Positions 6,769 to 52,408 of a stretch of 64,000 bases of DNA are shown piece after piece. This DNA comes from Asterias rubens. Taxonomy: Eukaryota. Positions within the stretch are counted from its first letter, which is position 1; every line of letters starts with the position of its first letter. The stretch lies in NCBI RefSeq assembly GCF_902459465.1, contig NC_047066.1:6634001-6698000 (forward strand), written 5' to 3'. Position numbers and translations under genes: made by a program. Under the pieces are notes generated by a model, which was given only the letters and a program-made list of their open reading frames with translations, made no database searches and was not told the DNA's origin.

Positions 6769-7168
6769 AGGCAGTGGACACTATTGGTAATTACTCAAAA
6801 TAATTATTATCATGAAACCTTTCTTGATTACGAGTAATGGGGAGAGGTTGATAGCATAAAACATTGTGAGAAACGGCTCCCTCTGACATTCTGAAGTGAA
6901 GTAGTTTTTGAGAAAGAAGTTATTTTCCACGAATTTGATTTCAAGACCTCAGATTTAGAATTTGAGGTCTCGAAATCAACCATCTGAAAGCACACAACTC
7001 AGTGTGACCATGGTGCGACAAGGGTGTTTTTTCCTTTCATTAATATCTTGCAACTTCAAAGACCAATTGAGCTCAAAATTGCACAGGTTTGTTACTTTAT
7101 GCATATGTTGAGATACGCTATAAGTGAGAAGACTAGTCTTTGACAATTACCAATAGTGTCCAGTGTCT
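6769..7168. mobile_element. TTAA-flanked non-autonomous DNA transposon (Kolobok-like)
   Basis: ttaa|aggcagtggacactattggtaatt...aattaccaatagtgtccagtgtct|ttaa. Family copies at 19366-19745, 44270-44647 (opposite orientation), 30679-about 30820 and about 39860-40063 (both partial). Confidence 0.85.
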
Positions 7169-8984
7169 TTAACAGCGTTATTAAAATTAGGACCAGGACC
7201 TGCTCATCCAGAGGTTGCGATACATAAAGTTGCCCGTAACCATTTGACATAGCAACTGTCTCGATAGTATGAGGAATTAATTTTAAGTAGTGACTTGTGA
7301 CTTAGCAAGTCCTTGTTCAAGACATTACCCAAATACAGTAATGGCTTAGCTTAGCTGGCTGTTTGGTGTATTCATTGAAAAATAGAGGTTTAGAATGAAA
7401 TTGCCCTATTTTAAAAGACAAAGTATCTTACATTTAGTAACTACACCTTCGATGTGCCATCTCTAAAAAATAAAAGAGCTGATTGTTTTACCAACCAAAA
7501 CTTTTACCCCAAAAAATTAATTAATTATTAAGTACCTATATGAACAAGCTTCGTCAAGTATTTGTTCATAAAAGCACCAACGGTTTTAAAGCACCAATAA
7601 ATTAGTTTAACAAGATGAGCTACAACATGTTATTAAGTAATGCTGAATGAATGCTGTCTGATCTGACAAAACAATTAAAACAATCAACCAGGGAGGAGAT
7701 TTGGTGTTCATGAAAATTCCACAAAAAAACTGGCCTGTGGGGCTGGATTCCCCCTTATTCTAAACCCAGAACCTGTGTAATGTTGTAACATTCAGGAGGT
7801 TTAAAGACTCGGTACATGACCAAAAATACAAAGATACAAGTTTCTTTCTTACTTCTTGCAAGAAAAGGTTAAGGCTCAACGAGGCTTTGAGGAAATCCTT
7901 GAAATCAGGAAAAATCCTTAGAAAGATATGCCAGGATAACAGCCCTCTCTATTGAAGTGTTCGCATCATTTGGTGCTTGATTTGTGGCAAGTTGTTTTAC
8001 TGTGTACTAACTTACAGAGCTTGCCATACTCGCGAAAACACCAGGGCCCAATTTCATGTCTCTGCTTACCGTAAGCAAAGAATCTGCAATTATGGAAGCA
8101 GGGAATTCAATATTTCACAGGTTAGCAGGAAATTTTCACATTACTAGGCATTCGACACTTAAAGAGCTCGTGCAGAAGTTCTGCGCTTGCCCTGTAAGCA
8201 GAGAATGGTGATCGTTTAGCTCAGAATATGGCGGTAAGCAGAGCCATGAAATTTTCCCCTGATGCTTGCTACTCTTTCTACAAGCAAAATTACCAGAGAA
8301 ATAAGGTGTAGAGTCCCAAACATGTGTCCATGAATTAGCAAATTTGTGAATACAAAGTACTTTAGAATTCATTGCAAAACAAAGTTATTATTGTAATGAA
8401 TAAACAGAAAAGCACCCTTTCAATGTCACAACATTCTCATCATCAACTTTAACCTCACTCTGAGAGGTCAAGTCACAAATGCTAAAACAACCTTTTCCTT
8501 CATTTTCTGGTAAAACTTTGTTACGCTTATATCAGAGATTACTTTTTCGACAAAATAAAAAAATTGTATGGAACAAGAACAAGGTATGAATTTAAGTCAA
8601 TGCAGTAAAAAGAAAACAAAAACAAAAAATCAGTACCATTTGCTCCACAAGGAATTACAAAAAATACTAACGTAAAACACTAAGTACGCCGATGTATGGA
8701 AGAGGGGAGGGATGATCCTAAATGCTTCAACCGAGGTCCACAAATAAAAGCGTGGTCTCTACAAGGTTAAGATGGTCGGGCAAAATGAAGACCACGCCCG
8801 ACCACGCCCCAACCACGCCCAGTATAAGAGTCAACCGCTTCTATTTCTCCAACACACCAAGATGCCTCAGTCATCTTTCAACTGTTACACAGTCACATTT
8901 TTTACACATTATAACAAAAATAAATACCTGCTCTATTTTTCAAACTTTGCAGGAAACTCTCTGAACTTTCATAGCAGACACTTT

Positions 8985-11900
8985 TTAGAGCTCTTCAAAG
9001 AAGGCAACCCTTGCTTTAGTTGAACCAGATTTTATCTGAAAAGCAAATAATAAAAAAATTAAATTAAACATGTTGATATAAACACTAATACTTTTGTTTT
9101 GGGGATGTAATAAACGACATACTTCGCTCGATGACGGCACCTGAACCAAAGGTGTTGGGATGGGCTGAAACTCTGGACCCAAGCTCTGGTGTTGTCAGCA
9201 GGAGAGTGTGGGTTCGATTCCCAGTCAGGACAAAACAGTATTGCTTTGCAGAAACAGGTTACCAGCCAAAATCAAACTAGTTTTGCATTGTTGAGGCTGG
9301 TGCCCAACTCAACTTCTGCTTAGCAAATTAACTTGTAAAAAAGTAACAACTTTGCGAAATTGGGCTCAGGTAGCTTCATGATGGGATCTTCAAAGAAGTC
9401 GATAACAAAATTCAAAATAAACTTACCCTGACGAGAGTAATGTACTTGGTCTCTCCCCTGTCGATCAGCTCGTTGTGTATTCGATCAAACTCCGTCTCCT
9501 TCTCCTCGACCTTCATGACTTCAATCTCCGACTTAAGCTCGTTCAGCTGCAACTGAAGATGTCTGCTCTTCTCCAGGTAGTCCACCCTGCAGGACGATAA
9601 TAATAATAATAATAATAGTGGCTTCTTATATAGCGCGCATATCCGTCACTAAGTGACGCTCAAGGCGCTTTAACATACAGTATTTTCCTGCAAGGTATGT
9701 GCGACTACATAGCGTTCCGTGCCTGGGTGGTTAAGAGCACCGGACTCAAGCTCAGGAAATACGCACTCCACAAACGCAACTGCTGTGGTGCCTTGTGTTT
9801 TTGCAAAGTTCCAATACAAATTTGAGTTTTCCTCATAGAAGTACCCCTAACAAGAGGAACAATTATGTGCCCCTTCAAGAATGGAAACATTACTAGACAA
9901 TATAATCCTGATAAAATAGAATTAAATGCTGAAAACTGCTTCCCAACCAAAATATGGTACAAATGCAAACAAAAGTTAGTGGCCTGACGTTTTAAACTAA
10001 AGGGAAGGTACACGTTTGGTAATTACTCAAAACAAATATTAACTTAAAAACTGACTTGGTAATGAGCAATTGGAGAGCTGTTGATGGTATAAAAGATTGT
10101 GAGAAACGGCTCCCTATGAAGTAGCATAGATTTTTTTAAAAGAGGTAATTTCTCACTCAAATAACAAAAGACTTCTAGCCAGAAGTCTTTTATTCCTTTC
10201 TGAAAGCACACAAATTTGTCCAACAAGGGTGGTTTTTCTTTCATCATTTTCTCGCAAATTCGATGACCAATTTAGCTCAAATTTTCACAGGCTTGGTATT
10301 TTATGCTTATGTTGGGATACACCAAGTGAGAAGACTGGTCTTTGAAAAATTACCAAACGTGTACCTTCCTTTTAACCCTAGCAGAGTCTTCAACCCTAGT
10401 AATCTTTCTCTGAGGCTAAATGACAACACAACACATGAACAGGGGTGCGTTCCACTCGCGCAAACGACTCGCAACTGTTCGCGCAAACGTTTTTTTATCG
10501 TTTGAACGATTGGTGCGTATACGCGATGTCAATATGGCGGCGCCCTGAAATGAAGATGGCGCGCACCATTTTTAAACTTCGTTTTTGCTGCAATAGTCCT
10601 CTTTTTGACATCATTACATCAACTAATTAACTTTGTTATTCCAAATCTGCATTATCATCCACCGAAAATACAATGTAATTATGTTTGTGACAAAGAAATA
10701 ATACCGTATGCTTGTCCGCCATTTTAAAAATCACTCGCCAACACCTCTGAAGTATGTTCGCCTAAAGTTGCCAACGTTCGCCAACGGTGGCGGCGAACAA
10801 CTCGTTCCACTTGAAATTGTTGGCGAACGTGCGCAACTTTTGGCAACGTTTGCGCGAGTGGAACGCACCCCAGGTATAAGTGTAACANNNNNNNNNNNNN
10901 NNNNNNNNNNNNNNNNNNNNNNNNNNNNNNNNNNNNNNNNNNNNNNNNNNNNNNNNNNNNNNNNNNNNNNNNNNNNNNNNNNNNNNNNNNNNNNNNNNNN
11001 NNNNNNNNNNNNNNNNNNNNNNNNNNNNNNNNNNNNNNNNNNNNNNNNNNNNNNNNNNNNNNNNNNNNNNNNNNNNNNNNNNNNNNNNNNNNNNNNNNNN
11101 NNNNNNNNNNNNNNNNNNNNNNNNNNNNNNNNNNNNNNNNNNNNNNNNNNNNNNNNNNNNNNNNNNNNNNNNNNACACAACAGAAACCTATATACCTTTC
11201 TTTTTCAATTTCTTTGGATAGTTTTTCCACATCCCCATCTGTCATCAGTTCATATGAGTTACTCTCGCTCTCGATCGCAAAGTCGCCGTCAAGTTGTAGC
11301 TTTTCTAGCTCGGAGCTTGTTATAACATGTGCGGACGTGAACTGTTTGAAAAATAGACACAGCATCAGGATGAGTAAACATAGTATGAGAAATCATTGCA
11401 ACGAGTATGTTATCTGATGTTACCGGAAGAGTGATGGCACACCATTGGTTCAATTTGGAGAGCACATTAGTTTGTATTTTCTAAGAATTTTCGTTGTAGA
11501 CCTGAAACTTTTTTGAACAAAAAGTTCTACTAGTCTTGAGAATGGATTGTACAACTAAATGTGATTGGTGAGTTATTGCATATCGTGCATTAATTTAATG
11601 AATCTGGCTATGGGTACAATATTTGCTGCTTAAAAAGTGGCACACTACAGTGACAACGAGAACGCTAACAATAATGATGCAAAGAGAACGCATTCTATTG
11701 GTTGAAATGCTCCAAGCAGAATACGCCCATGCTCATTCAACCAATCGAGGGCGATCATTTTTATCGTTCTCATTTTCGTCCTGTATGACCGGGCTTTTAC
11801 CCTCCCCTCTATTGGGTCTTCATTGTGTTCTGGGAATCTCAGAAATTCTTAAAGGAACATTACAGAGTTGGTAAGAAAACAAAATCGTGAAGATCACAGA

Positions 11901-17900: not shown

Positions 17901-20900
17901 CGTACATCAAGAGCTTGTCCCACTCTATTATTCCCTCGTTGTTGAGCAAAAATGTGACACTTATTTGTTAACAATCTCATAATCTCACCTTGGCCTGAAC
18001 AGCATAAGACGCCAATAAAACTGAGGCCTCCGGAGGGCAGTACACCTCCTCATTCAAGATCTGCTGCTTGACTTGAAGGAAGAATAGATGCTGGGTGATC
18101 TCCTGGATCAACTCTTCGCTCACTTCCTCCGGATAAAACTTGGCTGCAAACAAGAACGGCATCGGGGACGTCTTAGGGATGCCTTGCTCTTGCACCTATT
18201 GAGTGGGGAACAAAATTAGATTATAAATTGGTTTTTACCCATTACATGTACACCAATGTGTTTTAACACTGTATACTCAGTACTTTCCTGAGTTTTGTGA
18301 AAAAATCACAGGCATGTTAATCGGGTGGGATTCGAACCCAAGACCCTTGCAATTCTAGAGCAGTGTCTTACCAACTACACCAACGAGAATGCCTGAACTG
18401 CCTCTAGCTATTGGGCAATCTTGATGGTCTAGTTGGTAAGACACTGCTCTAGAATTGCAAAGGTCGCGGGATTGAACGCCTGTGATTTGTTTTCATAGAA
18501 CTCGCAGAAAGTATGAAGTATACAGTGCTAACACACATCGGTGTAAGGGTAAAAAGACAAATTTAAAATTAGATCAGTTTATCTTTTATTCATAGCTTCT
18601 GGAGCGTTCAACATCATTGTTACACTTAAGTTATACAAAAAAAGATCCATGCAATTTACAATTTTGCAATTGACTATTGGCATTGATATTTCTGACACAA
18701 GTATTTCTATGGTCCTCAGTGCCACGCCATCTACATGTAGTTTTCTAGCTGGAAAGGGAAAATCTGCACAAAAATATTGCAAATAGTTACACAAAAGTTC
18801 AACTTCAGTGTGGGACTGTCTATATGAGCGCATAGCTCACACAACAGATATCAGTATGGCAGCCCACAGTCATGGCATTTTCTCTAAATTTTCTAAGAAA
18901 TGGAGGTGCCCTTTGCAAAATGAAAGTGGCCTTGCCCTTTGCAAAATGAAATTCCAGGCCTGGAGAATATATCCGTTATTATCCTACTGTATGCAGGATA
19001 AACTCACTTTCTTATCCATCTTAAGCCAGCTGATGTATCCCTTGTGATCGATGAACCGCAGACCAAAGTACCAAGTTTCCCGTAGCCCAATGGTTCTGGC
19101 CACCAGGTCAAATAATTGTCGGCCAGTTGCTTTCCACTTTGAAAACAGAAAGAAAAAAAAATATTCTTTAATAGTTGAAACAAAAACCTCTCAGGAATTT
19201 GACGGGTTACTTTTACAATGTGTCTCACTGGGAAAAACCTGATATATAATGAGAAGAATTTCAAAATAATTGCTGGGTGAAAATGTTGTCACATTTAGCT
19301 CAGGGCTTGAGTTTTAGGGTAAAATGGGGCCTGTAGCTCAAACGCTTTACCGGACAAGAATTTAAAGGCAGTGGACACTATTGGTAATTACTCAAAATAA
19401 TTATTAGCATAAAACCTTTCTTGGTGATGAGTAATGGTGAGAGGCTGATGGTATAAAACATTGTGAGAAACGGCTCCCACTGAAGTGCCATAGTTTTCGA
19501 GAAAGAAGTAATTTTCCACGAATTTAATTTTAAGACCTCAGATTTAGAACTTGAAGTCTCTAAATCAACCATCTAAACACACACAAATTCGTGTGACATG
19601 GGTGTTTTTTTTCTTTCATTATTATCTCAAAAGTTCGTTGACCGATTGAGCTCAAATTTTCACAGGTTTGTTTTTTTATGCATATGTTGAGATACACCAA
19701 GTGTGAAGACTAGTCTTTGACAATTACCAATAGTGTCCACTACCTTTAACTTACAAGAAAATAATCTTTATTAATGAGAAAGAACTTTCTACACAATTTT
19801 ACATAAAAACTGTTTTATTTAAGCAAGTGCTTAGAGAAGATTGATCTCACTTTGTCTTGTGGGTAAGTAGGCCTACAGTACACCTAGGTCAATGTTTTGA
19901 TACTCAACAGACCTGATATTAAACAGACTCGAAAGCCAAATTTGAGCACAATTCATGTTTTTTAATTACACAGAAAAACACAAGAAGCTGGACCTGTCCA
20001 GTCATGATTTTACTTGTCATGCAAAAAATTGACCCCTGAGCACTGATCTCATTGTTTTGACACGTGTTCAAGTGCAGTGTTGCCTGAGCTCCAGTCTCAC
20101 TGGAAAACATTTATCATGTTGTCACCATTTTTACTTCTTTACACCGCTTGTCAAAACCATGCCATGGGAAACAATGTTATCCATAAAAAAAAATATAAAC
20201 AACTGATACTGATACACTGTACCATCATTTTTTATCAGTGATTGTTTTGCTAAATAAAAGATGTTGCTGGTGAACTGTGGTTGTTGTTTAGGAAAAAAAT
20301 TCAACCAAGTTCAATGGTGTTCACTTAGACAAAACAAAATATCAAACTGGTTGCAACCTTTACCCTGTGCACACACAAGATACAATGTTACTCAGCAGAT
20401 AGCACTTAATTGAGTCTACAATGAAAGGATTAATGTAAATTGTGGACTAGTGTCGTGGCCGAGCGGTTAAGAGCACCAAATTCAAACTCCGAAATTTCTG
20501 AATCCCCAGCCGTGACACTTGTGTCCTTAAAAGCAAGACACTTAACCATTGCTTCGTCCTTTGGATGGGACATAAAGCCGTTGGTCACATGTGTTGTGTA
20601 AATGCATGTAAAAGAACCCAGTGCACTTATCGAAAAGAGAAGGGGTTACCTCCCTCCAATTTTGGAGGGAGGTAGTGTTGATTTGTGTAATTCATAGACG
20701 TTAGTAAACCATTGTTTGTTATTGTATGAGAGAGGATGGCTATTGCCAGCTTGGTGTTTACATGTATAGGCCTATATATCCCCTTTTGGAAGTTAGCCGA
20801 GTTCCCTTGGTTGGAAGGGAAGATCATCTAAACAGACAAACACCAAACCAAATGAAAAGAAGAAAAAACATTTCAGTTCATGGAATCATGTCATAAGAGC

Positions 20901-38540: not shown

Positions 38541-39488
38541 GTTATTACCAGGTACTTGTGCAATGGCAACAGACTGACCAATCAAGAGGCCGCACATGCT
38601 GGACACGCCCACATGAATCTATAACTGTCGATTACATCATAGTTTTGCTTCAACACGCCGCGCGGCGCCTGCATTGAAAAGAAACTAAAAGACGTCATCA
38701 AAATTCACGTTTGTTTGACAATCGATTCATGATATTGATAGACGCTTGGGTTTTTGTTTGATTGCCGACGTTGCAAGAAAAGTGTTAAAACTCGTTGATA
38801 ATTCATCTTGCACTGTTAAAAAGAAAAGAATACAAACAAGAAAGCAAAATCCGACCGGGCCACTCAGGCGAGTGCGCGCTGTCAATTTGCTAGAAAAAAA
38901 TAGTTATCAACAAAATTAGCAAGGTTGTCGAACCTCCTAACTATCCACAAAACCTGAAAACCACATCATCGCAGGGCGATTACTTGCACAAATAAAAGCT
39001 GACTAGACCTAGTGTTTGTTAATTCCACACCCTTTATTTTGTATCTAGCCCTGGCCCTTTGAAGCAATTTTTCTAGAAAACAAATCCAAATACACAGGCC
39101 GCAAACGTACATCTGATGCAACCATCTGTAATAATACTGTAGACGGATCGTGAGTCACAGCACGCCAGTTCGCGAGGTTCATTACCTGGTATAATACGAA
39201 AACGGAGTGAATATGCTGACCAAATTATCTGGGGTCCATTCACTCAGTGACTAGGTGTAAGTGGATGACCTCAGCAAACAAAAACAAAGTAATTTTACCG
39301 TCTTGGAAAAGTGAATGAGTTACACACGAGCAACTCGCCAAAACATAAATGTCTACTTTAAAATATGTTTGTTTGTATAGATAATTATTTAAACCACAAG
39401 AGTTAGATTTGTTGACTTATGTATTCTTTATTTGGGGTTGGGTGGTTACTTGCAGATGGAGTGCTACATTTTTGTTTAAATCTAAAAA

Positions 39489-39504
39489 GCCACGAGAGGG
39501 CGCT
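39489..39504 (+). promoter_or_regulatory. CTCF-type motif (GCCACGAGAGGGCGCT) between the cyclase-like gene and the MVP 5' region
   Basis: Consensus match only. Confidence 0.4.
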
Positions 39505-40093
39505 ATCAAACTGATGTGACACCAAAAACAGCCGCAGTTTACAGCACAGTGTGATGGATGGCTATTCGTTTTTATTGATGATGCAGATCATTTTTAGGAA
39601 ATGTTAATATTACGTTAGTACTACTTCACCTCCTGTGCATCAGCTTATAGACCATGAAGGTGATGCAATGGGGGGGGGGCAGATGAGCAACAAAATAGAT
39701 AATGGACACTTGAAACAATTGCCTTCAAACCACGTTTACCGGTAGTGAATGCGAAATGTGTCATAATTTGTCAAACATTACAAATTCCATTATGTTCAGG
39801 AACAATTACATTTTTCCTTCAATCTTCAATACATCTTACAAACTTTATGTGGTAAATATCAGCATTTATAATTATATGATGGTGTCTTTAGAAATAACCG
39901 ACGATGTTAAAGGCAGAGGACACCACACAACTTCGTGTGACAAGGGTAATTTTTCTTCCATAGTTATCTCGCAACTCCGATGACCAACCGAGCTAAAATT
40001 TTCACAGGTTTACACCAAGTGAGAAGACTGGATTTTGACAATTACCAATCGTGTCCAGTGTCTTTAAAATCCTTCAGAGGCTATCATGTAGGC

Positions 40094-41677
40094 CTATACA
40101 CAAGGATTTTCGGGACAGAGTTCCTCTCCGCCGAACTCCAGAGCAGCGCCTTCGAATATCTGTGTACTCAAAAGACGGTAGCCAAACAGCCTACGCTCAT
40201 ACACGGCGATGTCAACCGATGCCGCAAAGCTTTCAACCAGTACATTCTCGAAGCCCCGCTCGGTGGGCCCTCTCAGACACTTCTGAAGGGTCGAAGGAGG
40301 CGCCCTAGCCCGTATGACCAACTTGTGCCGGAACGAAACCACTTCGATGGACACCTCGCCGGAGCAGCCATCCGAGGTCACCCGGGCCATTGAATTGACG
40401 GGGTGGAAGTTCAACTCCAGTTCGGTGTTGAAGTCCCTGACACCGAAGAGGTGAGCTGGTACCGATAGAGGACCGAACCCAAGCACCCCAAATGTCCCTG
40501 CGAAGGCCGTCGATGAGGTTGAGTTGACACCCTGCATCCAGATCCATGAAGCAGGGAAGCCGTTTCCCCAGTTTTTCTCCTGGTGCATTGTACCGTCGCC
40601 TTGGATGCGGAGGCCCGTCTTGTCATTCTCCCAAGTAAAGTCGCCAGGTGTTGCTAGGCTATAGACGAACCAATGGAGAGGGATGAACGGTACGTTGCCA
40701 AGCCAATCTTCTGGTCCTGTTGATGGAGAAAACCATAAGAAAAATTGAAAGAAAAGTGAGGTGTTATTCTAAAGAGAAGACCATCTAATTTTGGATTACA
40801 CTTTGTCTCATGTCACGGCAACCTTATTGTATTTTCGTAATCCAAACCATCACCGGGGGGAGGGAGGGGTCGGCACAAAGGGCTATCGAAACAAAACATG
40901 GGCTGGAGGTGATGATTAAAAAGGCGCTATCAAACAAAGTTTTAACATAGTTCGCCATAATGGGGCCACAGAATCTCCAGGGGGACCGAAATATTAAAGA
41001 GCATTCAACATTTTGTGAATTACTCAGTGAGCCGTGGCTGTCTCTTCTGTTTTTAAAACTACTTTGACCCAAGTGTTTCATAAAAAGTGGTGCAAGTATA
41101 AACGTTGATTTAGAGAAAGCACTTTGGAAAAAAAAACAGAGAACACAAAATCAGTCTCACCTTTACCGTGAGGTCCCCACGGAGATGGAGGCCCGAAGTT
41201 TCCCGAGAAGCGATCGTCTCCGATCGTAAAGTCGAACGTTGTTGAATCTGGCGTCACATTGAAGAATCCGAACGGCTTAGCTACCCATTCGAAATGTGAC
41301 GGACTCCAGTTGTCTGGATTTCCCGTCACCGGTCTTCCGCCGGATACAGTCACCGAGATGGTGTCCTCGTCTGGGTAGGCCTCGGCCACGACAAACGGTG
41401 CCGAATTGCCGTCACTTCGGATGATGGAGATATACGTCAGTGGAGGAGATGTGCTGTTGTTCCCTTCTTCCAATGGTTTTGGTAAGACCCGACCGAAGAG
41501 AACGCCGAAGGAGCGTGGGGAGGATGAGTCCGTTATACGGGCATACCAACCTTCGATGAACGGCCCTTGTTCGGGATAAACGTGGGGGTCATTATTATTT
41601 GCAGCCACTCCCGTTATTGCGGCAACTAGCAGAGCAAAAACGAGGGTCATTATGGACCGCCAAACCAATGCAGCCAT
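40094..41677 (-). CDS. Secreted tocopherol-cyclase (VTE1)-like protein, 379 aa, 2 exons
   Basis: Exons 41161-41677 and 40094-40716 are joined by a phase-1 GT-AG intron (1140 nt CDS). Hydrophobic signal peptide (MAALVWRSIMTLVFALLVAAITGVAA). Family motifs recognised by eye: FIEGWYARI, PLHWFV, HQEKNWGNGFPASWIWMQ. N-glycosylation sequons NNS, NST, NVT. Confidence 0.85.
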
Positions 41678-43303
41678 CTTGTTGCAAGGGCTGCTATGAC
41701 ATAGAGTTAAAATCGTTTAATCAGAACCTGATGCATAAATGGCTTGAATTGTCCTCGGGGATATAGACTATTATGCGGTGATGAAAAAGTTAAACCGTTG
41801 TGTCAACAGTGTCTGGTTTGAGTTAGATAACACTGCCCTTTGCTTTTTTGGATAACATGTTAAATAAGCACCACGTGATTGTTAAAGCTTGGAGGAAAGG
41901 TCATTGTTTTCACTAATATCTGTGTTCGGGGAAAAAAATGCATTTTTAGTTGCATTTTAAAACTCAATCCGATCTACCCAAACTCATCAAAAGTTGTAAA
42001 CTTATGTTTTTATGCTGAGAGATAAAGACACCAGAACAATCACTCAAACAATTAAAACAAACACCCCTAATAAACAATACAAAAACTACCCTAATTAAAA
42101 ATTAGGCCAAGTTCACGTGACCCTATAATAGAATATTATTTTTATGCACATTATACCGGCCTCCTGGCCAACACGGTCACAGAATGACACGAAAAGCAAC
42201 TTCTATAGACGTGTAGTCGTAGCCAAACCCAATGACTACACGTCTATAGCTAGATCTTCCATCATAACTTTTGGCCCAAACATTAAAAAATATATTTTTT
42301 TGAGTGAATTGTATTTCAAAGAGTATCACCCGCTCTAACGAAAAAAAGTTTAACTTTACTTTTAATGGTCAGGAACCATGACAAAAATTTAAAACGTTTC
42401 TTATAAATCAAACAAGAATTGGTCACGTGATATATTGTCGGGATCCCGACAAAAAGTAATTGTTAGCACTTTATTTCACTACTACTAATAGTCTGCGGAC
42501 TTTTTCGAGCAATGAAAGCTTGTAACTTTCTCGACCCCAATCAACATACCTATTGAATTTTAATTCAAAGTTTTTGGGTCAAATCGGCCAAAAATCTGAC
42601 ATAGCATCTTTGCCACATTCATAATATCATTTTTGATACGGCCCTTGACTATTTACGAGGTTATGTTGCACATAATCAGTGACATGTTTTTGTGCACTCC
42701 TCGTCCAGCTTTTCTCTAAAAAAGGTTGCAAACATAATTATCACTTACCTCACAATATTTTGGGACTAAACTTTTCGCAGACACACATTCCAAAGCTAAT
42801 ACAAATTTGTACGTAACACGTCTGGTTTCAACTTAAAGCATATAGAGTGTATGAATGCAACAAAGAAAGATAAAGGAAATCCGCTACTCCACAACTTGCC
42901 GAAATGTTCTACTGGATTTTTACTTGTAATGTTGTATCACTGTTTTGTGACCCTTTCAGATACAGCTGTTGGTCATTAATTGTAAGCAATTATACTGAAA
43001 AGAACAAAATGCGTCGGCCACACCCTTTTTAAAATAATGCACAACTTTCCCCTACTCGGGAAATAGAACAGCGAAGTCCCTAGTCCGTGACCGCTCTCAA
43101 GAATGGCGGCACATTCTTGTTGCAACAAATGGCTTTTTTGAATATCTCAAATTCCCGCGACAAGAAACAACAAAGGTAGACAAAAAACCACGATAGTTTA
43201 CATTGTGCAGAACGAAACAAAACAAGAGTTTACTACAACATTCGACCACTGCCAACGTTGCTTTATACACCGTTAAATCGTCTGGGCTTACGGCGGTGGG
43301 AAC

Positions 43304-52408
<9,105 letters not shown>

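What the first reader, a model, noticed from the sequence alone, without database searches (positions are those of the whole stretch)
40094..41677. Secreted tocopherol-cyclase-like protein encoded in an animal genome
Seen: a complete 379-aa two-exon gene with a signal peptide, four Cys residues (possible disulfides), several N-glycosylation sequons, and motifs EGWY and EKNWGxxFPxxWxWxQ that I recognise from the tocopherol cyclase (VTE1) family. Known: VTE1 closes the chromanol ring of vitamin E in cyanobacteria and plastids, and animals do not make tocopherol de novo. Inference: a secreted version cannot be doing the plastid reaction in its usual setting. It may be an extracellular cyclase or hydratase acting on dietary or endogenous prenyl-quinones or polyketides, or a lipid/quinone-binding protein. 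Its single intron, against 8-15 exons in neighbouring genes, would fit an old horizontal transfer or retroposition, but does not show one. This is the best candidate in the window for an undescribed function.
Basis: partly seen in the sequence, partly recalled or inferred. Interest (0 to 1): 0.8.

Follow-up and report, generated by a model that had tools for sequence, protein, structure and literature searches.

The report
Secreted tocopherol-cyclase-like starfish protein
The starfish Asterias rubens carries a real, expressed gene for a secreted relative of the plant vitamin-E ring-closing enzyme; it belongs to an old, uncharacterised family shared by corals, echinoderms, acorn worms, molluscs and worms, and its substrate is unknown.

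Summary
A two-exon, 379-aa gene lies on the minus strand at 41677..40094. It equals RefSeq LOC117290107 of Asterias rubens, "uncharacterized protein", which starts at Met10. A transcript contig carries exactly the predicted splice. Of 12 differences from the reference in that transcript, 11 are synonymous.

The protein passes the Pfam Tocopherol_cycl cut-off (45.7 bits against 26.6). It keeps the FEGWY and HxEKNWGxxFPxxWxWxQ motifs. It folds with high confidence (pLDDT 94.8) into the AttH-type double barrel. Plant VTE1 models are its closest characterised structural relatives.

It is not a VTE1 orthologue. It belongs to a separate exported clade with a signal peptide and a clade-wide Cys pair, plus a second Cys pair found only in animals. 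The clade occurs in stony corals, echinoderms, a hemichordate, molluscs, nemerteans, an annelid, amoebae and scattered bacteria.

Animals form one clade (100/100). A phase-1 intron is shared across echinoderms and the hemichordate, so the gene is ancient and inherited vertically. It is not a recent transfer.

Its function is untested. The most likely role is a cofactor-free enzyme that protonates a prenyl double bond of a lipid, then closes a ring or adds water, outside the cytosol. I rate it a new variant of a known kind, of moderate interest.

The parts
41161..41677 (-). Exon 1: Met1 to the first base of codon 173. RefSeq starts at Met10 (41650).
   Evidence: Rebuilt. Colinear with orthologues. 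The X1 transcript contig covers 41160-41612.
41600..41677 (-). Predicted signal peptide, about residues 1-26, ending ..TGVAA just before NNNDPH.
   Evidence: Hydropathy maximum at residues 8-26 and no later hydrophobic segment. In all 35 eukaryotic homologues a hydrophobic N-terminus directly precedes the conserved DPH..EGWY block. In the model this part is a low-confidence N-terminal helix. Cleavage is inferred.
41537..41557 (-). IEGWYAR motif, first strand of the N-terminal barrel. E42, G43, W44, Y45 and R47 are nearly invariant.
   Evidence: Alignments A1 and A2. Shared with the canonical-type bacterial group L047/L050/L052.
40717..41160 (-). The only intron: 444 bases, GT..AG, phase 1, inside the Gly codon of G-K-G|P-E-D-W.
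   Evidence: joint 40715|41160. The same alignment column and phase are used in Amphiura, Antedon and Glandiceps.
40094..40716 (-). Exon 2: the rest of codon 173 to Val379, plus the stop at 40094-40096.
   Evidence: Pfam PF14249 37.2 bits on this exon alone. X1 contigs cover 40040-40715.
40532..40585 (-). HQEKNWGNGFPASWIWMQ, residues 217-234. This is the family's signature and proposed catalytic motif.
   Evidence: H217, E219, K220, N221, W222, G223, F226, P227, W230 and W232 are at least 90% conserved in A1 and A2. YxEKNWG plus FPxWxWxQ was proposed as the catalytic region of plant and cyanobacterial cyclases (PMC4963081).
40100..40366 (-). The four Cys codons: C290 (40364-40366), C319 (40277-40279), C373 (40115-40117), C378 (40100-40102). 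They probably form two disulfides.
   Evidence: C290 and C373 are conserved through the exported clade. Both are absent together in L017 and in the canonical-type outgroup. C319 and a C-terminal Cys occur only in animals. The pairing is inferred.
40040..40093 (-). Start of the 3' UTR, as far as transcript contigs show it.
   Evidence: X1 record 1 spans 40040-40384.

Best explanation
This is Asterias rubens LOC117290107, a genuine, spliced, single-copy gene under purifying selection. It encodes a secretory-pathway protein with a cleavable signal peptide, probably two disulfides and N-glycans. The protein has the AttH-type double-barrel fold and belongs to a distinct exported clade of the tocopherol-cyclase family (Pfam PF14249). 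Animals have inherited the gene vertically since before the cnidarian-bilaterian split. The eukaryotic clade as a whole nests among bacterial sequences. The family's proposed catalytic motifs are intact, so the most likely mechanism matches the characterised relatives VTE1, CrtC, kievitone hydratase and archaeal Hgs. In that mechanism a cofactor-free acid/base enzyme binds a lipophilic prenylated substrate in the barrel and protonates a trisubstituted isoprenoid C=C. The resulting cation is then captured by a neighbouring hydroxyl (ring closure) or by water (hydration). This would happen in the secretory, lysosomal or extracellular space, not in a plastid. Shown here: gene, splice, transcript, constraint, family, fold, clade and age. 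Inferred: secretion, disulfides and catalysis. Unknown: substrate and tissue.
For: Gene and expression: model; exact splice in an X1 transcript contig, with cover on the exons only; 11 of 12 CDS differences synonymous; only these two exons match the family profile in the genome; flanking genes are animal genes with Vault, LDLa and Trypsin domains.
Family: PF14249 45.7 bits, E 6e-12, cut-off 26.6; motifs kept and proposed as catalytic in PMC4963081.
Fold: pLDDT 94.8, pTM 0.91. For the Amphiura orthologue model, plant VTE1 models are the best Swiss-Prot matches (E 5e-19 to 3e-18, TM 0.67-0.69, 19-21% identity), ahead of CrtC at 4e-12. For the Asterias model, solved structures give Z 23.7 Fsa2, 23.6 CghA, 22.9 AttH 2ICH, 20.2 kievitone hydratase and 17.6 25-phosphosteroid lyase, against 6.3 for the next unrelated chain.
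Export: a hydrophobic N-terminus precedes the conserved block in 35/35 eukaryotic and 43/44 bacterial homologues, and 18/44 bacterial ones have a lipobox-like Cys. The Cys pair is present or lost together.
Age: animals 100/100, Ambulacraria 100/95, Lophotrochozoa 100/95, eukaryotes 97/90. A phase-1 intron is shared across Ambulacraria.
Precedents: kievitone hydratase is a secreted, N-glycosylated fungal enzyme of this fold (PMC5805349). AttH-like hydratases add water at tertiary isoprenoid carbons (bioRxiv 10.1101/2025.10.20.683597).
Against: There is no biochemical evidence for any member of this clade. The Pfam score is modest (46 bits, against 124 bits for the canonical-type bacterial group), and identity to plant VTE1 is only about 20%. 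So the same chemistry is not assured. The fold also hosts Diels-Alderases, a phosphosteroid lyase and the non-enzymatic ceramide binder Svf1. Three 2026 RNA-seq runs of the species show almost no reads on the exons, so expression is restricted or low. No signal-peptide predictor was run, and a signal anchor is not excluded. Bacterial gene neighbourhoods gave no pathway clue. I could not inspect model coordinates, so the position of the conserved residues in the pocket is not shown.
Confidence: 0.6

Rival explanations
1. It is a true chromanol-forming cyclase with VTE1 chemistry. It would convert dietary or endogenous prenylquinols (DMPBQ/MPBQ-type quinols, plastoquinol, ubiquinol-like compounds) into tocochromanols or plastochromanol-like products outside the plastid. 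Marine invertebrates would then complete part of chromanol synthesis themselves.
For: Plant VTE1 models are the closest characterised structural relatives. The (Y/H)xEKNWG..FPxxWxWxQ and FEGWY motifs are kept. Chromanols and chromenols are reported from marine invertebrates, with their biosynthesis largely unassigned (PMC9078042).
Against: The clade is separate from canonical-type cyclases: there is a long branch to the L047 group and the score is 46 against 124 bits. Its exported location is remote from where prenylquinols are made. The same clade occurs in amoebae and heterotrophic bacteria that are not known to make tocopherols. No pathway partners lie near the bacterial genes. No assay has been done.
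Confidence: 0.12
2. It is a non-catalytic secreted carrier or sensor for lipids or quinones. It would use the double barrel as a lipocalin-like binding cavity, as the ceramide-binding protein Svf1 does.
For: The fold is shared with Svf1 and Svf2 (ranks 25 and 28). The protein is secreted, disulfide-bonded and glycosylated like many carrier proteins. No activity is known.
Against: Near-invariance of polar and charged residues (E42, R47, H217, E219, K220, N221, E366) from bacteria to animals is typical of catalysis rather than hydrophobic ligand binding. The closest characterised relatives are enzymes.
Confidence: 0.15
3. It is an enzyme of this fold with different chemistry, for example a pericyclase or Diels-Alderase, an epoxide-rearranging enzyme or a lyase acting on a sterol or polyketide.
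For: The highest Z-scores among solved structures go to Fsa2, CghA and Phm7 (Z about 23), and a 25-phosphosteroid lyase is at Z 17.6. Starfish are rich in modified sterols (my own knowledge, not tested here).
Against: Identity to those enzymes is only 7-12%. None of their Pfam families (DA_N, AsqO_C) hits the protein. The conserved sequence motifs are those of the tocopherol-cyclase family.
Confidence: 0.1
4. It is a contaminant, a recent horizontal transfer into the starfish, a retrocopy or a pseudogene.
For: It has only one intron among many-exon neighbours, and local G+C is higher (0.477 against about 0.38).
Against: It is embedded between MVP and an LDLa/trypsin gene. It is spliced and transcribed, intact and constrained. 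Orthologues exist in six echinoderm species of five classes and a hemichordate, and the same intron was confirmed in the four ambulacrarian genes examined, from starfish, brittle star, crinoid and hemichordate. The animal clade has 100/100 support.
Confidence: 0.01

Closest known systems
Tocopherol cyclase VTE1 / SXD1 / slr1737 (Pfam PF14249, EC 5.5.1.24)
   Same: Same Pfam family, above the cut-off. Same fold, with the best Swiss-Prot structural matches. The FEGWY, (Y/H)xEKNWG and FPxxWxWxQ motifs are shared. It is probably cofactor-free acid catalysis on a prenyl double bond.
   Different: It is a separate clade with about 20% identity. It has a signal peptide instead of a plastid transit peptide and a conserved disulfide pair. 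It lacks the long plant C-terminal extension. It occurs in animals, amoebae and heterotrophic bacteria. The substrate is unknown, and no vitamin-E pathway context is seen.
Tocopherol-cyclase-like proteins of heterotrophic bacteria (Szymanska group, PLoS One 2016, PMC4963081)
   Same: They are uncharacterised PF14249 relatives outside phototrophs that keep the EKNWG region.
   Different: That paper lists bacteria only and has no occurrence of 'animal'. The exported clade with a Cys pair, and its animal members, are not described there.
Kievitone hydratase (Fusarium/Nectria; PDB 7A0Q)
   Same: AttH-type fold, Z 20.2. It is a secreted, N-glycosylated enzyme with a signal peptide that hydrates a prenyl double bond of a foreign (plant) lipid-like compound (PMC5805349). 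This is the best functional analogy for an extracellular member.
   Different: About 9-10% identity, a different Pfam family, and fungal. Its role in phytoalexin detoxification is established, whereas nothing is established here.
Carotenoid 1,2-hydratase CrtC and archaeal hydroxy-GDGT synthase Hgs (AttH-like hydratases)
   Same: Same fold (CrtC E 4e-12). They add water at a tertiary isoprenoid carbon through a conserved acidic residue (PMC4717167; bioRxiv 10.1101/2025.10.20.683597).
   Different: No PF07143 hit. The His-x-Trp...Tyr-x-Asp catalytic set of CrtC could not be mapped onto this protein. They are cytoplasmic or membrane-associated prokaryotic enzymes.
Fungal decalin-forming Diels-Alderases Fsa2, Phm7, CghA and MycB, and AttH NE1406 (PDB 2ICH)
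   Same: These are the highest structural Z-scores among solved structures (22.7-23.7).
   Different: 7-12% identity. The tocopherol-cyclase motifs are absent from those families' definition. The chemistry (pericyclic) and the biological setting (secondary-metabolite clusters) are different.

Membership tests
Pfam PF14249 Tocopherol_cycl (family in the broad sense) | HMM score above the curated gathering cut-off (26.6 bits) | tested here: met
   P0239 scores 45.7 bits, E 6e-12, and exon 2 alone scores 37.2 bits. Orthologues score 45-64 bits.
Pfam PF14249 Tocopherol_cycl (family in the broad sense) | Signature motifs (Y/H)xEKNWG and FPxxWxWxQ, plus N-terminal FEGWY | tested here: met
   HQEKNWGNGFPASWIWMQ and IEGWYAR are present and nearly invariant in the clade. 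The motif is defined in PMC4963081.
Pfam PF14249 Tocopherol_cycl (family in the broad sense) | Fold like VTE1 | tested here: met
   With the Amphiura orthologue model (51% identical), plant VTE1 AlphaFold models are the top Swiss-Prot matches, E 5e-19 to 3e-18, TM 0.67-0.69. With the Asterias model, 'Tocopherol cyclase' fold clusters match at about E 1e-17.
VTE1 orthologue (true tocopherol cyclase of plastids and cyanobacteria) | Groups with plastid and cyanobacterial cyclases in a tree | tested here: inconclusive
   Plant and cyanobacterial sequences could not be fetched. Against the canonical-type bacterial group (124 bits to PF14249), the animal protein sits in a different clade across a branch of about 3.4 changes per site.
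VTE1 orthologue (true tocopherol cyclase of plastids and cyanobacteria) | Plastid or cytoplasmic location (transit peptide or none) | tested here: not met
   It has an N-terminal signal-peptide-like segment, a conserved Cys pair and sequons. The location is inferred, not measured.
VTE1 orthologue (true tocopherol cyclase of plastids and cyanobacteria) | Cyclises DMPBQ/MPBQ to gamma/delta-tocopherol | not testable with these tools
   This needs an enzyme assay or complementation.
AttH-like double-barrel superfamily | Two-barrel beta fold superposable on NE1406 (2ICH) | tested here: met
   Z 22.9, rmsd 4.2 over 282 residues. Foldseek E 1.3e-10. The model has pLDDT 94.8.
CrtC / kievitone hydratase type hydratases | Match to their sequence families and their catalytic residues (CrtC His239, Trp241, Tyr266, Asp268) | tested here: not met
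   No PF07143 or other hydratase family hit at E up to 0.01. No sequence-level match to PDB chains. The residue mapping could not be done without coordinates.
Fsa2/CghA-type Diels-Alderases | Pfam DA_N / DA_C / AsqO_C domains | tested here: not met
   Only PF14249 is found. The structural similarity is high but identity is 7-12%.

The most novel reading that the evidence does not exclude
Marine invertebrates, from corals to starfish, encode their own secreted prenyl-lipid cyclase or hydratase. It would act on isoprenoid quinols or related lipids from food or from the animal itself. It would make chromanol-type or hydroxylated products, for example finishing tocochromanol or plastochromanol-like antioxidants or meroterpenoids that are now credited to algae or symbionts. 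If so, this would be an animal-encoded step of 'plant' lipid chemistry, retained for over half a billion years and lost in vertebrates and other model animals.
Probability: 0.12. Interest if true: 0.85.

Novelty: new variant of a known kind. Interest (0 to 1): 0.5.

Why it matters
Tocopherol cyclase is treated as an enzyme of phototrophs, and animals are held to depend on diet for chromanols. Here an intact, constrained and expressed family member is shown to be part of an ancient animal orthologue group with secretory features. The papers I found mention it only as a line in coral annotation tables (PMC3750612, PMC6214176).

The characterised enzymes of this fold perform chemically difficult, cofactor-free protonation of unactivated isoprenoid double bonds. 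An extracellular animal version would therefore be a new enzymatic activity for animals. It could bear on three questions:
- where marine-invertebrate chromanols and meroterpenoids come from;
- how grazers and predators process prenylquinones and carotenoid-like lipids;
- whether the enzyme is useful in biocatalysis.

The question is directly testable with a recombinant protein. If the protein turns out to be a mere lipid carrier, the interest is modest.

Tried and rejected
- Sequence searches of solved structures, with exon 2 and with the family profile, found nothing meaningful. NCBIfam also gave nothing.
- I looked for a conserved operon around the bacterial homologues. The neighbours differ from locus to locus (Fer4, metallo-beta-lactamase, HD-GAF, NifU, peptidases, MCP, ExbB, FGE-sulfatase) and include no prenylquinone or carotenoid genes.
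- I considered that the clade might mark predatory or phagotrophic organisms. The whole-collection pattern scan returned mostly Bdellovibrionota, Myxococcota and Elusimicrobia. However, only 10 of 301 sampled genomes of the Bdellovibrionota-type phylum carry it, so it is sporadic there. I do not rely on this idea.
- Canonical plant and cyanobacterial VTE1 sequences could not be brought into the tree. The bacterial group L047/L050/L052, which scores 124 bits to PF14249, served as a stand-in outgroup.
- Three raw RNA-seq runs of the species (X12-X14) gave about zero reads on the exons. This is not evidence of a pseudogene, given the spliced X1 contig.
- High read depth at 39835-40155 and 42189-42500 comes from dispersed repeats, not from this gene.
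- No paper in the library mentions the LOC identifiers of six orthologues. Searches pairing 'tocopherol cyclase' with bivalve or sea urchin gave nothing relevant beyond a chromanol review.
- Rfam and repeat searches of the locus were empty.
- Bilaterian monophyly within the gene tree is not recovered in the best tree, where corals group with Ambulacraria (100/98). It is not rejected either (AU p 0.13 on the careful tree and 0.72 on the quick tree).
- No complex prediction was attempted, because no binding claim is made.
Full report
**Observation.** The gene lies on the minus strand. Exon 1 runs 41677..41161, a 444-base GT..AG phase-1 intron runs 41160..40717, and exon 2 runs 40716..40094 including the stop. 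Together they encode 379 residues. An in-frame stop lies 14 codons upstream of Met1. Residues 10-379 are identical to P0239, 'uncharacterized protein LOC117290107 [Asterias rubens]'. The window is therefore from the common starfish, and the gene is already annotated, with its start at the second Met. The family profile finds only these two exons in the 417.6-Mb genome. The flanking genes are ordinary animal genes: major vault protein on one side and an LDLa/trypsin-domain gene on the other. Contamination is thus excluded.

**Expression and constraint.** I laid reads and contigs of four runs of the species on 39300-42500.
- A 723-nt contig of run X1 joins 40715 to 41160 and skips exactly the predicted intron. 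X1 contigs cover the exons from 40040 to 41612 and none of the intron.
- Three deep RNA-seq runs from 2026 show about no reads on the exons, so expression is restricted or low in those samples.
- Twelve positions in the coding sequence differ between the X1 transcript and the reference. Eleven are synonymous and one is a conservative E375D change. This is the pattern of purifying selection.
- Near-identical words of exon 2 also occur in three marine metatranscriptomes. I could not lay those runs.

**Family.** Exon 2 alone scores 37.2 bits on Pfam PF14249 Tocopherol_cycl, and the whole protein scores 45.7 bits (E 6e-12) against a cut-off of 26.6. IEGWYAR is at residues 41-47 and HQEKNWGNGFPASWIWMQ at 217-234. 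Their key residues are at least 90% conserved in alignments of 90 and 98 relatives. A study of plant and cyanobacterial cyclases singled out YxEKNWG with the adjoining FPxWxWxQ as the probable catalytic region, and noted cyclase-like proteins of unknown function in heterotrophic bacteria (PMC4963081). That paper does not mention animals.

**Fold.** Two models were made.
- The Asterias protein gave pLDDT 94.8 and pTM 0.91. The 51%-identical brittle-star orthologue gave 94.5 and 0.90.
- Against reviewed UniProt models, searched with the brittle-star model, plant tocopherol cyclases lead (E 5e-19 to 3e-18, TM 0.67-0.69, 19-21% identity). They are followed by CrtC (4e-12), Rv0493c and fungal Diels-Alderases.
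- Against solved structures, the Asterias model gives Z 23.7 for Fsa2, 23.6 for CghA, 22.9 for AttH NE1406, 22.7 for Phm7, 20.2 for kievitone hydratase and 17.6 for 25-phosphosteroid lyase. The next unrelated chain is at 6.3.
- No tocopherol cyclase structure appeared among the solved-structure matches.

The protein therefore has the AttH-type double barrel, and VTE1 is its closest characterised relative.

**A distinct exported clade.** A search of 1.84 billion representative proteins with exon 2 found 470 relatives at E up to 0.001. Named relatives are as follows:
- stony corals: Oculina, Montipora, Desmophyllum;
- echinoderms of five classes: Asterias, Acanthaster, Amphiura, Diadema, Lytechinus, Antedon;
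- the hemichordate Glandiceps;
- many bivalves and gastropods;
- nemerteans (Lineus, Tubulanus) and the annelid Owenia;
- amoebozoans (Planoprotostelium, Balamuthia, Dermamoeba, Soliformovum), a rhizarian (Lapot) and one green-algal record.

No vertebrate, arthropod or nematode protein appears among the listed hits, but the lists are truncated, so absence is not shown. A pattern scan of one genome per prokaryotic species gave 48 loci, mostly Bdellovibrionota, Myxococcota and Elusimicrobia. The gene is sporadic even there, in 10 of 301 sampled genomes of one such phylum.

Several features mark the clade as exported.
- In all 35 eukaryotic and 43 of 44 bacterial sequences, a hydrophobic N-terminal segment comes immediately before the conserved DPH..GPxFEGWY block. 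In 18 of the bacterial sequences it has a lipoprotein-like Cys.
- Cys290 and Cys373 are conserved through this clade. Both are missing together in one Bdellovibrionales sequence and in the canonical-type group. That co-variation is expected of a disulfide.
- Cys319 sits in an animal-only insertion, and it is accompanied by a Cys near the C-terminus (Cys378 in the starfish). This pair is found in animals only.
- The starfish protein has five N-glycosylation sequons and no other hydrophobic segment.

I infer a secretory-pathway protein. This was not tested with a dedicated predictor or by experiment.

**Age and origin.** The careful maximum-likelihood tree has 81 sequences under LG+C20+F+G4. It is rooted on the bacterial group that scores 124 bits to PF14249. 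Support is given as ultrafast bootstrap / SH-aLRT:

| Clade | Support |
|---|---|
| Animals | 100/100 |
| Ambulacraria | 100/95 |
| Lophotrochozoa | 100/95 |
| Cnidaria | 100/100 |
| All eukaryotes, nested among bacteria | 97/90 |

The best tree puts corals with Ambulacraria (100/98). Holding Bilateria together is not rejected (AU p 0.13 on the careful tree, 0.72 on the quick tree).

Gene structures agree with vertical descent. The starfish intron lies in the same alignment column, the same Gly codon and the same phase as the intron of the crinoid Antedon, of the hemichordate Glandiceps, and the second intron of the brittle star Amphiura. The Oculina and Mytilus genes have no intron. The family is thus intron-poor throughout. 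The one intron arose before echinoderms and hemichordates diverged, and the gene was present before the cnidarian-bilaterian split.

A bacterial origin of the eukaryotic clade is plausible from the rooting. Whether animals received the gene vertically from an earlier eukaryote or from a protist cannot be decided here. Recent transfer, retroposition in the starfish lineage and pseudogene status are all excluded.

**Mechanism (inferred).** The family's characterised relatives all work without cofactors on isoprenoid double bonds.
- VTE1 closes the chromanol ring.
- CrtC hydrates lycopene through an essential Asp, with His, Trp and Tyr partners (PMC4717167).
- Kievitone hydratase hydrates a prenyl group and is itself a secreted, N-glycosylated enzyme with a 19-residue signal peptide (PMC5805349).
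- An archaeal AttH-like protein hydrates tetraether lipids at tertiary carbons (bioRxiv 10.1101/2025.10.20.683597).

Polar and charged residues (E42, R47, H217, E219, K220, N221, E366) are retained from bacteria to animals. This favours catalysis over simple lipid binding. My best reading is a secreted acid/base enzyme that protonates a prenyl double bond of a lipophilic substrate and closes a ring or adds water. The substrate may be of dietary or microbial origin, by analogy with kievitone hydratase. The bacterial neighbourhoods gave no help on the substrate. Other possibilities remain open: true chromanol formation, other chemistries seen in this fold, or a carrier role like that of Svf1.

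**Comparison with the literature and novelty.** Coral papers list a 'tocopherol cyclase' among plant-like genes or domains without analysis (PMC3750612; PMC6214176). RefSeq names one abalone orthologue 'tocopherol cyclase, chloroplastic-like'. No paper in the library mentions the orthologues' identifiers. A chromanol review notes chromanols and chromenols in marine invertebrates, with their biosynthesis largely unassigned (PMC9078042). The gene is therefore known as an annotation, and its family is known. What has not been described is the exported, disulfide-bearing clade, its deep animal history and its function. I class it as a new variant of a known kind, with moderate interest (0.5), pending an assay.

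Noticed in passing
window 39924-40067, just downstream of the stop codon; other copies at 44266-44435, 19580-19749, 10207-10362 and 7013-7172: A dispersed repeat of about 145-170 bases (about 70% identity between copies in the window) lies in or next to the 3' UTR. It attracts heavy RNA-seq depth from reads that run on into unlike sequence, so those reads come from many other copies in the genome. It has no Rfam match.
   Followed up: partly
window 42189-42500, about 0.5-0.8 kb upstream of the start codon: A second stretch has high RNA-seq depth at 95-99% likeness, with most reads only partly on it. It looks like another dispersed repeat. No other copy was found inside the window.
   Followed up: partly
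L002:13925-17458 (Amphiura filiformis, downstream of the orthologue): The brittle star has a tandem paralogue of the gene (P0212, partial model). The nemertean Lineus longissimus also has two copies on one chromosome. The starfish has one.
   Followed up: partly
window 40094-40716 (exon 2), in runs X2-X4: Seawater and marine metatranscriptomes from two studies hold 22-24% of the sampled 31-mers of exon 2. This might reflect starfish larvae or shed RNA in plankton samples.
   Followed up: no
window 40001-42000: G+C is 0.477 in the 2-kb bin holding the gene, against 0.33-0.44 elsewhere in the window. This fits a compact, exon-dense gene in AT-rich surroundings and is not evidence of foreign origin on its own.
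   Followed up: no
P0015 ([Myrmecia] bisecta, green alga) and P0018 (Lapot gusevi, Rhizaria): A green-algal record and a rhizarian transcript fall inside the exported eukaryotic clade, next to an amoebozoan and next to animals respectively. This could be contamination from prey or associates, or gene transfer between eukaryotes.
   Followed up: no
G001:C42:13755-14429 (L059): One Bacteriovoracaceae genome carries a second, different PF14249 homologue (a 463-aa open frame matching the N-terminal two thirds of the profile) besides the exported-clade gene.
   Followed up: no
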